Source: Amoeboaphelidium protococcarum X5 (taxonomy: Eukaryota; Fungi; Aphelidiomycota). Taken from it: DNA of 64,000 nt. Where the stretch lies: the NCBI GenBank assembly GCA_023515725.1, contig JALDTO010000155.1:1-64000 (forward strand), written 5' to 3'. Numbering within the stretch: the first letter of the stretch is position 1; every line of letters starts with the position of its first letter. The position numbers and the translations under genes are program-made. Below are positions 56,777 to 61,698 of the stretch, one piece after another. The notes beneath the pieces are model-generated. The model saw only the letters and a list, made by a program, of their open reading frames with translations. It did no database searches and had not been told where the DNA came from.

Positions 56777-58489
56777 TCATCTGTCAATCTCACCAAATAC
56801 CACGTCCATAGTACCAATGATGGCGACAACGTCTGCAATCTGATGATATCTGCACATCCAGTCAGCGGCGGATAGGTGAGCAAATCCAGGTGCTCTAATC
56901 TTGCACCTGTACGGCTTACTGCTACCATCACTGATCAGATAGACACCAAATTCACCTTTAGGAGCCTCCACAGCGGTGTAAGTCTCTCCAGCGGGCACAC
57001 TGAATCCCTCAGAGTACAGCTTGAAGTGATGGATCAATCCCTCCATACTCTCCTTCATATAACTTCTAGGCGGTGGTGAGATCTTCATGTCTTCCACCTT
57101 GACTGGACCAGAAGGCATCTTATCCAGACACTGCTTTATGATGCGCAGAGACTAACGCATCTCCTCCACTCTGATCAAATATCTGTCATAACTGTCACCG
57201 TTCTTTCCAACAGGGACATCAAACTCCATATCACCATAAGCATCATATGGCTACACCTTTCTCAGATCCCAAGCAAGACCAGTACTACGAAGCATCGGAC
57301 CACTAAATCCCCAATCCAGGGCCATCTCTGTATTAAACGGCGCGATACCGATCAATCTACTTCGCCAGATGGGGTTAGCAGTGAGCAACTCCTCAACTTC
57401 ATCCACTCTACTGCTAAACTGAGTACACCAAGTGTAGATATCATCCAACAGACCAAGCGGCAAATCCTGAGCCACACCACCAGGACGCACGTATGCTGCA
57501 TGCATTCTAGCTCCACTGACACGCTCATAAAACTCCATCAACTTCTCACGCTCCTCAAACATCCACAGGAACGGAGTGAAAGCACCGATATCAAGAGCAT
57601 GTGTAGTCACAGCCATAATATGATTACCAACACGCGTAATCTCGGCGAACAGAGTTCTAATATACTTGGCTCTATCCGGCACATCAATGTTAAGCAGCTT
57701 CTCCACAGCCAGGCTGAAGCACTGCTCATTAACCATCATACTAACATAGTCGAGACGATCAAAGTACGGCAATGCCTGCAGGTACGTCTTGTACTCGATC
57801 AACTTCTCTGTACCTCTATGCAGTAGACCGACGTGAGGATCAGCTCTAATGACAATCTCACCACTCAGCTCTAGAATCAGACGCAATACACCATGCGCAG
57901 CCGGATGTTAAGGACCAAAATTGAGGATATAATGCTTCAGATTGGACGCTTCTTCAGCCTTGTCTGCCACCTCAGCTTTGACCTGAAGGACATACGGCCA
58001 CAGTTGGATCAATTCTTCAGAATCCAATCGCTGAAAGTAATTATGAGGTTGCATATCCACACCAGACTCTCCTTCAACTGCATCGCTACCAAAAGAACCA
58101 CTAACAGCACGTCCAGCCTCAGGTCCACTCATTTCATCAGGCAAGTGTCTATTGATCAATCCCTTCTGGTCCAGCAGATCAAATAATCTGGTCAACTCGG
58201 CTCTCTTCAAGTTTTGGAATCTAAAGTGAATATTATCCTTGTCCACATTCCAGACATACTTTCGCTCCTTAGACTCTGGAGGCACCACACGATCCTCAGG
58301 AGACTTGATGGCGAACGTTGTCTTGTTAGTGTCCACCTTTGAGAAATCAGACACGATACTTCTATCCTTACCACTGGATACACATCTTTTAACAATTAGG
58401 GGATTACTGCTATTGAAGAATACAGCTGGCCTCACCCACAGTGATTGAGAATATTGTCCAGTTCTAAGTAAACTGCACGACTTTAACAT
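56777..58489 (-). CDS. NDUFS2: Complex I 49-kDa subunit, nuclear-encoded, 570 aa
   Basis: [15 protein letters not shown] (Gln from TAA), [17 protein letters not shown], ending [15 protein letters not shown]. Three track ORFs are in one frame. Confidence 0.97.
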
Positions 58490-58552
58490 GCTCTATCCAC
58501 CCAGTTCCCGTTGATGTTGTTGCTTGTGCTACTGCTGTTTAAATGACGAAAA

Positions 58553-58572
58553 AGAGAGAGAGAGAGAGAGAG
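58553..58572. repeat. (AG)10 microsatellite in the NDUFS2/PPIL2-like divergent promoter
   Basis: Read directly from the sequence. Confidence 0.9.
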
Positions 58573-58785
58573 CAACGGGCGGAAAACCAAAAAATCGACA
58601 AGAAAGATTTAAATCTCACTCTCTATCTCGCTCTCTCCCCTCAGCGCACTGTAGGCTCTGAGAATCTTGTTCATCTAACACCAGAGCACTATTAGTCTCA
58701 AAGATAGAAATTTAGCTGCACAAGGATATCATCGTCCGTCTTTATTATCTGTAGACAAGTGTGCCTAATAGAAATCATCAATAAA

Positions 58786-59292
58786 ATGGGTAAAGGGAAA
58801 GGAGATAAATTGTATATATCGTAGAAGGAATGGAGCAGAGATTTTAAAGGATATCGAGTGAGTGGCGGTAGTGATGGACAACAGTCGCGCGTAGGAAAGC
58901 CAGGCTCGCAGTAATCTCGTCGAATTGTTCACAATGCTCTCGCTCAAAGAGTTTTGAAGGACATGGAGAAATCGACTGATTCTGTTTCACTTCCTCTTTC
59001 AACGAGTGACGCGTCTAAGTAGAATTAATAGTCTGCTCTTGTTTTGCCTAAACCCGCAGTTGGTGATGTAATCGGAGCTTAGTCATCTTGGGTTTCAAAG
59101 CCATCATCTGGTGGAGTTGGCAAGTATTTGAAACTGGATAGTCAAAATATTAATTAATCCAAGTCAAAAGACATTACTGAGAAGAATAATGGGACTCACG
59201 TTCCACGTACTGCAAAAGTCGGTTAATCACATCATCCTAAAGTTGGCACGATGAAGACTTCTCAGAAACTGAGTGATTTTAGCTCATGGTGA
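58786..59292 (+). CDS. Miniature PPIL2/Cyp60-like protein (168 aa) lacking U-box and cyclophilin domains
   Basis: Starts MGKGKGDKLYISQKEW (PPIL2 N-terminal motif), contains GVGKYL and ends LSDFSSW* (PPIL2 C-terminal motifs). The frame is uninterrupted and absent from the ORF track. Confidence 0.75.
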
Positions 59293-59494
59293 TTACATGT
59301 ATAGTCTGTAAAGTGATGTTATATTGTTTCAGAATGTATTTTAGACGTGTTTATTCTAATCTAGAGTTATTCATTTATTGCCAACTTTACACTTAACTTG
59401 CAAGCTTATTTTTCAATGAGGACGTAGCCAGCGTCGGTATAGTTCTTTTTCTCTGCTTACAGAACGAATTGACGTTTTTAGATCAGGTAGAATT

Positions 59495-60412
<918 letters not shown>

Positions 60413-60612
60413 ATATATATAGTTCTCTAAATTTATAATTCTCCAACTGACCAGTTTATCATTTTGATAGAAAGTCCCGTTTGAAGTTTCGCTCTTGACG
60501 CGACCGCGCCGATTTCTCGTCATCTTTCCGCTTTCTTTCAAGCGCTACTGTTATACCGCAGTTGCATCATCTTAGTCGGTGATCCTTAATCGAAAGTAGT
60601 AAGTAAAGTGGA

Positions 60613-61698
60613 ATGACTGTGGAATCTGCAATGGAAGTTGAACAAGAACAGTAATAGAGACAGTTTACGGCGAGGGAGAAAGGTAAATAGCCTGCAGCAG
60701 CTTCACCGCTATCATCCGACTCACTGCCATGGATTGAAAAGTATCGCCCACAATAGCTGAAGGATCTGGTATCTCATCAAGACATCATTTCTACAATTAA
60801 CAAGTTTATAGACGCTGGTCAGTTGCCTCATCTTCTATTGTATGGGCCACCGGGAACTGGTAAAACTTCCACAGTGCTAGCTTGTGCTCGTAAGATGTAT
60901 GGGGAAGACTATCGCAAGATGATCCTGGAGTTGAATGCCAGTGATGACCGTGGTATCGATGTGGTGCGTGAGTAGATTATCACGTTTGCTAGTACTAAGC
61001 AGATCTTTAATCAGGGAGTCAAGTTGATTATTCTGGATGAGGCTGATTCAATGACACAGCCAGCGTAGGCAGCACTGAGACGTGTTATGGAGAAGTATAC
61101 CCGTAATGTGAGATTCTGTATCATTTGCAACTATGTCAGTAAGATCATCCCAGCTATTTAGTCTAGATGCACCAGGTTTAGATTTGCTCCATTGAGACGT
61201 GAGTAGATTCAGGATCGCTTGAAGTTTATTGTTCAGCAGGAGGGCATAGTGATGAAAGATGATGGTATGACTGCTCTGATGCGTCTGGCTAAAGGAGATA
61301 TGAGACGCGCTCTGAACATTATGCAATCGGTCCATGCGGCTTATAATCTGGTCAATGAAGAGAATGTATACTCTTGTGTTGGCGCACCTCTACCTAAAGA
61401 TATTGAGTCTATTGTTCACGCTCTATTAGAGAAGGACTTCGCCGGTGCATATGACTTTATCAGCACTCTGAAGGTGGAAAGGGGACTGGCACTGGCTGAT
61501 TTGGTGACTGAAGTGTTCTAATTCGCCCTTAATATCGATTTTCCGGCCAAGATGAAGACGTACCTGATCAAGGAGTTGGCGGATATTGAATTCAGGTCAA
61601 GCAGTGGTTGCAGTGAGAAATTGCAATTGAGCAGTCTCATTGCCACATTCCAGATTGGCAGAGACATCGCTGCCGGTATACAATCATCATTGTCATGA
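60613..61698 (+). CDS. RFC5: Replication factor C small subunit (human RFC5 / yeast Rfc3), 361 aa
   Basis: [60 protein letters not shown]. Confidence 0.95.

What the first reader, a model, noticed from the sequence alone, without database searches (positions are those of the whole stretch)
58786..59292. Hollowed-out PPIL2: terminal motifs kept, U-box and cyclophilin domains both absent
Seen: a clean 168-aa ORF, MGKGKGDKLYISQKEW...NALAQRVLKDM...GGVGKYL...LSDFSSW*, with a low-complexity middle. Known: spliceosomal PPIL2/Cyp60 (~520 aa) begins MGK...DK(M/L)YI..(E)(Y/W) and ends GVGKY...FGDFSSW, with a U-box ligase and a cyclophilin domain in between. Inference: the gene lost both folded enzymatic modules but kept its short terminal motifs intact. 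That would make it a natural minimal spliceosome tether in an intron-poor genome and would point to the indispensable parts of PPIL2. Standard-code annotation misses it entirely.
Basis: partly seen in the sequence, partly recalled or inferred. Interest (0 to 1): 0.8.

Follow-up and report, generated by a model that had tools for sequence, protein, structure and literature searches.

The report
Domain-less PPIL2 remnant gene
A small, apparently selected gene in this TAA/TAG=glutamine genome keeps only the conserved first ~25 and last ~60 residues of the spliceosomal protein PPIL2, has lost its U-box ligase and cyclophilin domains, and no full-length PPIL2 was found in the assembly, so PPIL2's uncharacterised end motifs may work on their own.

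Summary
Window 58786-59292 (+) is a 168-codon frame ending in TGA, with 8 in-frame TAA/TAG read as Gln.

It behaves as a gene. A second syntenic copy on the same contig (165 aa, 87% nt identity) differs only by in-frame indels. dN/dS is 0.41 (bootstrap 0.24-0.74), while the upstream spacer has non-3n indels.

A profile of 65 PPIL2 proteins matches it in two collinear, end-anchored pieces:
- Profile 7-27 matches residues 5-25.
- Profile 487-542 (the profile's end) matches residues 99-168 (the protein's end).

Scores are 19.6 and 15.8 bits. None of 19,782 shuffles reached 10 bits. The GVGKY...DF-S-S-W-TGA signature occurs exactly twice in the 23.6 Mb genome: these two genes.

Whole-genome scans with cyclophilin, U-box, Rtf2, zf-NOSIP and the full PPIL2 profile found no canonical PPIL2.

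In an AlphaFold2 PPIL2 model the termini are low-confidence, although they are as conserved as the domain cores. That fits linear motifs that bind in trans.

Verdict: a real, new domain-less variant of PPIL2. The "tether" function is inference.

The parts
58786..59292 (+). Complete coding sequence, 168 aa plus TGA, read with TAA/TAG = Gln. No intron is predicted.
   Evidence: Translation. There is no TGTAG acceptor inside the frame. The frame is kept in the paralogue, with only 3n indels. dN/dS is 0.41.
58786..58860 (+). N-terminal PPIL2-type motif, residues 1-25 (MGK..DKLYI.., ..EW.., ..G..).
   Evidence: hmmsearch domain 1 aligns profile 7-27 to residues 5-25 at 5.7 bits. The family N-termini are listed. 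pN is 0.027 against pS 0.22 for residues 1-31 between the copies.
58915..58965 (+). Conserved internal block, residues 44-60, probably helical. No detectable PPIL2 counterpart.
   Evidence: One non-synonymous and two synonymous changes between the copies. No Pfam hit. Not aligned by the PPIL2 profile.
59032..59067 (+). Conserved internal block, residues 83-94, identical in both copies even at the nucleotide level.
59113..59127 (+). GVGKY motif, residues 110-114: the first half of the PPIL2 C-terminal tail signature.
   Evidence: Profile alignment. G and Y are invariant in 45 PPIL2 tails. Genome-wide pattern match.
59275..59292 (+). DFSSW followed directly by the TGA stop, residues 164-168: the PPIL2 C-terminal end motif.
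   Evidence: The profile alignment ends exactly at the profile's end and at the protein's end. F and W are invariant in PPIL2 tails. The pattern is found only 3 times in the genome, and two of those are these genes.
58490..58785 (.). Non-coding spacer shared with the divergently transcribed NDUFS2 gene, holding GA/CT tracts. A presumed bidirectional promoter.
   Evidence: 63-76% identity to the paralogous locus, with indels of 13, 1, 11 and 8 nt, none a multiple of 3. So the in-frame upstream ATG near 58543 is not coding.
59293..59360 (+). Conserved 3' flank, presumed 3' UTR.
   Evidence: The alignment bin 59261-59360 (which also holds the last 32 nt of the CDS) is 91% identical between the two loci; the next ~100 nt are 47% identical.

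Best explanation
This is a real protein-coding gene. It encodes an ~18 kDa, basic, intrinsically disordered protein that descends from PPIL2 (Cyp60) by loss of everything between the family's conserved N-terminal ~25 residues and its conserved C-terminal tail. The tandem U-box, the linker and the cyclophilin-like domain are gone, about 440 residues in all. They are replaced by ~75 residues with no detectable PPIL2 similarity.

Shown here:
- The frame is real, and a diverged second copy maintains it under purifying selection.
- Both ends match the PPIL2 family profile in the right order and at the very ends.
- No canonical PPIL2 was detected in the assembly.

Inferred, not shown: the two terminal motifs are short linear motifs that bind partners in trans. 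Most plausibly these are sites on the activating (pre-Bact/Bact) spliceosome, where PPIL2 resides. The protein would then act as a non-enzymatic occupant or adaptor of those sites, without ubiquitin-ligase or proline-binding modules.
For: Gene reality:
- Frame and genetic code.
- Second syntenic copy at G000:C155:950789-951286(-): 165 aa, 87% nt identity, all four indels multiples of 3.
- dN/dS is 0.41, bootstrap 0.24-0.74, with 0.5% of replicates at or above 1. Conserved blocks give 0.15 and spacers 0.69 (the blocks were chosen post hoc).
- The flanking non-coding DNA carries non-3n indels.

PPIL2 descent:
- A genuine intronless PPIL2 was recovered from a metagenome (L029). It retrieved 2,035 homologues at E<=1e-20; the best 120 were listed, and those that carry a source name are called PPIL2, CYP65 or peptidyl-prolyl isomerase.
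- Their termini show MGK.QH.KD..[YF][IL]T..EW...GG.K at the start and G[VI]GKY followed 37-83 aa later by F.[DN]FS.W at the end.
- A profile of 65 of them scores the window copy at 19.6 bits (E 2e-8 per sequence) and the second copy at 15.8 bits. Each gives two collinear domains, and the C-terminal match runs to the last position of both profile and protein.
- 0 of 19,782 composition-matched shuffles reach 10 bits. The next-best ORF in the window scores 3.9 bits.
- The GVGKY...DF-S-S-W-TGA DNA signature occurs only at these two loci in 23.6 Mb; the reversed control gives 0.

No canonical PPIL2:
- PF00160 hits are PPIA-, PPIB-, PPIH-, PPIL1-, CWC27-, PPIL4- and Cyp40-like genes. None has a U-box.
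- PF04564, PF04641 and PF15906 hit only UFD2, FHA-U-box, U-box-vWA, RTF2 and NOT4.
- The full PPIL2 profile hits nothing at profile positions 90-290.

Trans-acting motifs:
- In an AlphaFold2 model of a PPIL2, residues 1-30 have pLDDT 50-61 and residues 466-519 mostly below 50, while the domains are at 80-97.
- Yet the terminal motif columns are as conserved as the domain cores.

Context: PPIL2's U-boxes bind SNU114 in Bact-type spliceosomes (PMC10208982; PMC13332222).
Against:
- The similarity rests on about 35 informative residues. Searches with stop-free pieces against PDB, Pfam and the ESM Atlas found nothing, and the genome tool's first look did not pick up the tail profile.
- The N-terminal motif lacks the invariant His6.
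- Selection was measured between only two paralogues in one genome. No orthologue from another species was available.
- The absence of canonical PPIL2 is absence from a 346-contig assembly of unknown completeness.
- Nothing here shows binding to any spliceosomal protein. The known SNU114 contact of PPIL2 is made by the U-boxes, which are missing.
Confidence: 0.72

Rival explanations
1. An unrelated, lineage-specific disordered protein whose ends resemble PPIL2 by chance or by convergence on the same binding partner.
For: Only short motifs match. Piecewise searches of PDB, Pfam and the Atlas are blank. The N-terminal domain alone scores only 5.7 bits.
Against: There are two independent motifs, in the family's order. 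The C-terminal match runs to the last position of both profile and protein, and Met1-Gly-Lys matches the family's start. The total is 19.6 bits, against a maximum of 9.9 among 19,782 shuffles. All four invariant tail residues (G, Y, F, W) are present. The signature is unique in the genome. The genome otherwise shows no PPIL2, so a remnant is what one would expect to find.
Confidence: 0.1
2. A decaying remnant (pseudogene) of PPIL2 after a large internal deletion, with no present function.
For: It is more diverged between the copies (87%) than the neighbouring genes (94-96%). The spacer segments evolve at dN/dS 0.69. There are no expression data.
Against: Both copies keep a start codon, a full frame and the same stop after dS of about 0.2. 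All four indels are multiples of 3, whereas the adjacent non-coding DNA has indels of 13, 1, 11 and 8 nt. dN/dS is significantly below 1, and about 0.15 in the motif blocks.
Confidence: 0.06
3. A derived short paralogue, with a canonical PPIL2 present but missing from the assembly; or an assembly collapse that removed the middle of the gene.
For: The assembly has 346 contigs and its completeness was not measured. Read coverage could not be checked.
Against: The same short architecture is assembled twice, independently, in syntenic but diverged contexts. The region has no N. Other genes of the genome typically appear as two diverged copies, so both copies of a canonical PPIL2 would have to be missing. 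Four Pfam models and the family profile found none.
Confidence: 0.1

Closest known systems
PPIL2 / Cyp60 / CYP65 / PUB49 (RING-type E3 ubiquitin-protein ligase PPIL2), a component of pre-Bact/Bact spliceosomes
   Same: The N-terminal motif (MGK..DK-L-Y-I-[ST]..EW..G). The C-terminal tail with GVGKY[IL] and an F-S-S-W end at the very C-terminus. The spacing between the two tail motifs lies within the family range of 37-83 aa.
   Different: It is 168 aa, against 500-620 aa in the family. There is no tandem U-box (PF04641/PF15906 type), no ordered linker and no cyclophilin-like domain (PF00160), and it has no Cys at all. The N-terminal motif is two residues shorter and lacks the invariant His.
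NOSIP and RTF2 (zf-NOSIP / Rtf2 split U-box proteins)
   Same: PPIL2's N-terminal region is scored by the same Pfam models (PF15906, PF04641) that define these families.
   Different: The genome's PF04641/PF15906 hits are RTF2, NOT4 and a U-box-vWA protein, not this gene. This ORF has no U-box or RING part.
Spliceosomal intrinsically disordered 'peptide-like' factors that bind through short motifs
   Same: Small, basic and disordered, with islands of conservation.
   Different: This is only an analogy from general knowledge. No sequence relationship was tested or found.

Membership tests
PPIL2 (RING-type E3 ubiquitin-protein ligase PPIL2) | N-terminal tandem U-box (Pfam PF04641 / PF15906 / PF04564 type) | tested here: not met
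   The profile aligns nothing between residues 26 and 98. There are no Cys. Own-genome scans with PF04564, PF04641 and PF15906 do not hit this locus. The pieces give no Pfam hit.
PPIL2 (RING-type E3 ubiquitin-protein ligase PPIL2) | C-terminal-half cyclophilin-like domain (PF00160) | tested here: not met
   The PF00160 scan of the genome gives 14 hits, none at this locus or at its paralogue. The PPIL2 profile matches only the termini.
PPIL2 (RING-type E3 ubiquitin-protein ligase PPIL2) | Conserved N-terminal motif MGK.QH.KD..[YF][IL]T..EW...GG.K | tested here: inconclusive
   Residues 5-25 align to profile 7-27 at 5.7 bits. D, E, W and one G are kept. The invariant His6 is lost and Thr14 is Ser.
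PPIL2 (RING-type E3 ubiquitin-protein ligase PPIL2) | C-terminal tail: G[VI]GKY, then 37-83 aa, then F.[DN]FS.W as the last residues | tested here: met
   Residues 99-168 align to profile 487-542 (the profile's end) at 16.2 bits, E 2e-7. All four invariant residues are present. The signature is unique in the genome.
PPIL2 (RING-type E3 ubiquitin-protein ligase PPIL2) | Association with pre-Bact/Bact spliceosomes; E3 ligase activity | not testable with these tools
   The literature describes the U-box to SNU114 contact. Nothing here measures binding or activity. Ligase activity is implausible without a U-box.

The most novel reading that the evidence does not exclude
The strongly conserved but uncharacterised N- and C-terminal motifs of PPIL2 are autonomous, trans-acting spliceosome-binding peptides that carry a function separable from the U-box and the cyclophilin domain. 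This organism's introns reportedly nearly all end in (T)GTAG. Here that function alone has been retained, giving a natural separation-of-function allele of PPIL2.
Probability: 0.35. Interest if true: 0.75.

Novelty: new variant of a known kind. Interest (0 to 1): 0.58.

Why it matters
PPIL2 is present in activated human spliceosomes. Its U-boxes are seen on SNU114, but its role is unclear: its cyclophilin domain is reported to be catalytically inactive, and the physiological role of its ligase activity is unknown (PMC6315705).

Its extreme N- and C-terminal motifs are as conserved across eukaryotes as the domain cores. Yet AlphaFold2 predicts them as disordered, and none of the papers found here discusses them.

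A gene that keeps only those motifs under purifying selection, in a genome where no full-length copy was found, argues that they have an independent function. It also supplies a minimal construct, about 25 plus 60 residues, for pull-downs, cross-linking or structure prediction against spliceosomal proteins. Finally, it is a clean example of a gene that is invisible to standard-code annotation.

Tried and rejected
I did not trim and resend, so there is no read-depth or RNA evidence, and read laying was not used.
2. phmmer of the two longest stop-free pieces of the paralogue against PDB at E<=10 found nothing. Pfam on five pieces found nothing. The ESM Atlas by features gave no usable hit. These blanks reflect piece length (29-45 aa), not absence of similarity.
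3. The genome search with the 54-position tail profile A2 found nothing, not even the two genes. Its first look is too coarse for such a short profile, so it was replaced by an explicit DNA pattern.
4. In the metagenome pattern scan, 16 of the 17 hits are not PPIL2 genes: no profile match within 4 kb upstream. Only L029 was useful.
It was redone from references.
6. The whole 168-aa product could not be given to the search, fold or complex tools, because references read through stops are not accepted. All whole-protein work was done in scripts on the stored DNA under table 6.
7. Complex prediction was not used. There was no justified partner, and the product is not admissible. The AlphaFold2 monomer model gives no sign that the two termini dock on each other or on a domain.
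8. The large representative search was not run. A tail-only profile cannot reach significance there, and the claim does not rest on absence of relatives.
9. Considered and rejected: an upstream in-frame ATG near 58543 (non-3n indels); an intron inside the ORF (no TGTAG acceptor); residual linker or post-cyclophilin-helix similarity in the middle of the protein (no profile domain reported even at domE 1000).
10. The FGDF resemblance of the PPIL2 end to the G3BP-binding motif is only a lead. This protein has L-S-D-F instead.

Full report
**The observation**

Window 58786-59292 on the + strand is 507 nt. It opens with ATG and ends with TGA. It holds eight in-frame TAG/TAA codons, at codons 13, 43, 79, 81, 82, 99, 124 and 147. 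Under the standard or bacterial code the longest piece is 35 aa.

The reassignment is not an assumption. In three other genes of this genome TAG occupies the invariant glutamine of the cyclophilin motifs IQGGD or GCQFF. Domain matches across the genome are interrupted by TAG/TAA and almost never by TGA. Earlier notes of this scan name the organism as Amoeboaphelidium protococcarum (I did not check this). Its UAR = Gln code is published (cited in PMC5304391).

**Is it a gene?**

The same contig carries a second copy 890 kb away, in inverted orientation: G000:C155:950789-951286(-), which is L002:1501-1998(-). It is 165 codons long and 87% identical at the nucleotide level.

The two loci are syntenic. 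NDUFS2 lies divergently upstream and COQ5 downstream. Those genes are 94-96% identical between the loci, and the spacers are 47-76% identical.

Within the ORF all four indels are multiples of three (9, 6, 3 and 3 nt). The 296-bp upstream spacer has indels of 13, 1, 11 and 8 nt. This places the start at 58786 and excludes an upstream in-frame ATG.

Nei-Gojobori dN/dS under table 6 is 0.41. dN is 0.085 and dS 0.207; the bootstrap 95% interval is 0.24-0.74, and 0.5% of replicates are at or above 1.

Conservation is blocky. Residues 1-31, 44-60, 83-94, 106-133 and 159-168 together give about 0.15. The spacers between them give about 0.69. The blocks were chosen after seeing the alignment, so this split is descriptive only.

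There is no TGTAG intron acceptor inside the frame and no N in the region.

The product is 18 kDa, pI about 10, GRAVY -0.9, about 70% disorder-promoting residues, and without cysteine.

**Is it PPIL2-derived?**

The product cannot be handed to the search tools, because references read through stops are not accepted. Its stop-free pieces are too short to find anything. I therefore fetched real PPIL2 sequences.

A metagenome scan for DNA encoding F-G-D-F-S-S-W-stop gave 17 loci. One of them, L029, holds an intronless 567-aa gene with U-box, cyclophilin domain and that C-terminus. The other 16 are chance matches.

With L029:85-1785 as query, the word search returned 2,035 homologues at E<=1e-20. 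The best 120 were listed, and those that carry a source name are called 'RING-type E3 ubiquitin-protein ligase PPIL2', CYP65 or peptidyl-prolyl isomerase. Their Pfam domains are PF00160 plus PF04641, with or without PF15906.

- The family begins MGK.QH.KD..[YF][IL]T..EW...GG.K.
- It ends with G[VI]GKY[IL], then 37-83 residues that include a basic patch, then F.[DN]FS.W as the last residues.

These columns are as conserved as the cores of the folded domains.

A profile built from 65 complete PPIL2 proteins scores the window copy at 19.6 bits (E 2e-8 per sequence) and the second copy at 15.8 bits. In each there are two collinear domains:
- Profile 7-27 matches residues 5-25.
- Profile 487-542, the last profile position, matches residues 99-168, the last residue.

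None of 19,782 shuffles of the two proteins reaches 10 bits. Among 1,743 table-6 ORFs from the window and the fetched own-genome loci, only proteins with a true cyclophilin or U-box/RING-type domain score higher. The next-best ORF in the window scores 3.9 bits.

At the DNA level, GVGKY followed within 100-200 nt by D-F-(S)-(S)-W-TGA occurs exactly twice in the 23.6 Mb genome, at these two genes. The reversed-pattern control gives zero. The end motif alone occurs three times.

The match is not perfect. The N-terminal motif is two residues shorter and lacks the family-invariant His6, and Thr14 is Ser. Residues 26-98 show no detectable similarity to any part of PPIL2.

**Is there a full-length PPIL2 elsewhere?**

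Six-frame, stop-tolerant scans of the whole assembly gave the following.
- PF00160 gave 14 hits. On inspection these are PPIA-, PPIB-, PPIH-, PPIL1-, CWC27-, PPIL4- and Cyp40-like genes, mostly in two diverged copies. None has an N-terminal U-box.
- PF04564 found UFD2, an FHA-U-box protein and a U-box-vWA protein.
- PF04641 and PF15906, the models that score the PPIL2 U-box region, found only RTF2, NOT4 and the U-box-vWA protein.
- The 544-position PPIL2 family profile (alignment A1) hit only those cyclophilin domains and, weakly, the U-box-vWA protein. It hit nothing at profile positions 90-290, the PPIL2-specific second U-box and linker.

So no canonical PPIL2 is detectable. The caveat is that this is a 346-contig assembly whose completeness I did not measure. 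Because genes here usually come in two diverged copies, both copies of a canonical PPIL2 would have to be missing. PRCC, a reported PPIL2 partner (PMC6315705), is present.

**How it probably works**

Published structures place the tandem U-boxes of PPIL2 on SNU114. An ordered linker (residues 234-266) connects them to the cyclophilin domain about 90 Å away (PMC10208982). PPIL2 is already docked on SNU114 in a pre-Bact state (PMC13332222). None of the papers I could read says what the extreme termini do.

An AlphaFold2 model of a 519-aa PPIL2, built with 59 homologues, gives pLDDT 80-97 for the domains. It gives 50-61 for residues 1-30 and mostly below 50 for residues 466-519. The termini are therefore highly conserved but are not predicted to dock on the protein's own domains. 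That is the usual signature of short linear motifs that fold on a partner.

Two diverged gene copies have lost every folded module yet keep exactly these motifs under purifying selection. This is the strongest argument here that the motifs function independently of the domains.

My best reading is a disordered, non-enzymatic protein that occupies the sites normally bound by the PPIL2 termini, most plausibly on the activating spliceosome. This last step is inference. No binding, localisation or expression was tested.

**Comparison with what is known, and novelty**

By the domain definition of PPIL2 (U-box plus cyclophilin) this protein fails two defining features. It should not be annotated as an E3 ligase or a cyclophilin. 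By descent it is most likely a PPIL2 remnant.

I found no report of a domain-less PPIL2. I could not search databases for other small proteins with both termini, so 'first of its kind' is not established. I rate it a new variant of a known kind.

It matters mainly as a natural separation-of-function allele that points experiments at the uncharacterised PPIL2 termini. It is also an example of a gene missed by standard-code annotation. Earlier notes of this scan report that the organism's introns nearly all end in (T)GTAG (unchecked by me beyond the motif scan). This makes changes in its spliceosomal proteins of added interest.

**Rivals**

- Chance or convergent resemblance, about 0.10. It is disfavoured by two ordered motifs at the two ends, by the shuffle control and by genome-wide uniqueness.
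- A functionless relic, about 0.06. It is disfavoured by frame retention, 3n-only indels and dN/dS below 1 in two copies.
- A missing canonical gene or an assembly collapse, about 0.10. It is disfavoured by two independently assembled copies with the same architecture and by blank scans with four domain models and the family profile.

- No reads were examined.
- No sister genomes were available; the genome tool holds only prokaryotes besides this assembly.
- Whole-product searches, folding and complex prediction were not possible.
- The large representative search and complex prediction were deliberately not used.

Noticed in passing
G000:C155:949289-952786 (L002) compared with window 57286-60792 (L001): The whole NDUFS2 / short-PPIL2 / COQ5 block is duplicated in inverted orientation 890 kb away on the same contig. 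Coding identity is 94-96% and spacer identity 47-76%. Most other genes examined have their second copy on a different contig. So this is either a large intrachromosomal inverted duplication or two homeologous segments joined in one contig.
   Followed up: partly
L009 (G000:C155:697601-698128); L014 and L016 (G000:C214:395947-396472): The PPIL1-like single-domain cyclophilin is very divergent, at 94 bits against 170+ for PPIA/PPIB. It has an insertion of roughly 25 residues after the FHR-type strand, and altered residues where the QGGDPTGTG loop normally lies. The C214 copy is split into two matches with a TGA between them, which could be an intron or a broken copy.
   Followed up: no
L015 (G000:C182:48226-48957): The Cyp40-like protein (cyclophilin plus a TPR-like C-terminus, 579-aa frame) has a cyclophilin domain interrupted by long charged insertions. 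It scores only 37.7 bits against PF00160. Only one copy was found.
   Followed up: no
Whole genome, PF04564 scan: The U-box model hit UFD2, an FHA-U-box protein and a U-box-vWA protein, each in two copies. No PRP19-type U-box appeared in the list. Whether PRP19 is present with a divergent U-box was not checked.
   Followed up: no
window 59293-59360: The stretch just after the stop codon lies in an alignment bin (59261-59360) that is 91% identical between the two loci, while the following ~100 nt are 47% identical. This may be a conserved 3' UTR or termination element.
   Followed up: no
L005, L006, L008 (cyclophilin genes): TAG encodes the invariant Gln of the IQGGD and GCQFF cyclophilin motifs. 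This is direct in-genome evidence for TAG = Gln.
   Followed up: yes
PPIL2 family C-termini (P0001-P0120): Many PPIL2 proteins end in F-G-D-F-S-S-W, which contains the FGDF sequence known from the literature as a G3BP NTF2-like-domain binding motif (papers listed). The gene studied here has L-S-D-F instead, so the first Phe and the Gly are not required in it.
   Followed up: no
L029 (metagenome contig Ga0310343_10083733, 85-1788): A complete intronless 567-aa PPIL2 gene on a 2 kb metagenome contig. Its closest named relatives are brown-algal and other stramenopile proteins.
   Followed up: partly
window 59595: GTGAGT lies shortly after the predicted COQ5 start at 59496, and the frame changes near there (ORFs). 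This may be a short intron in COQ5.
   Followed up: no
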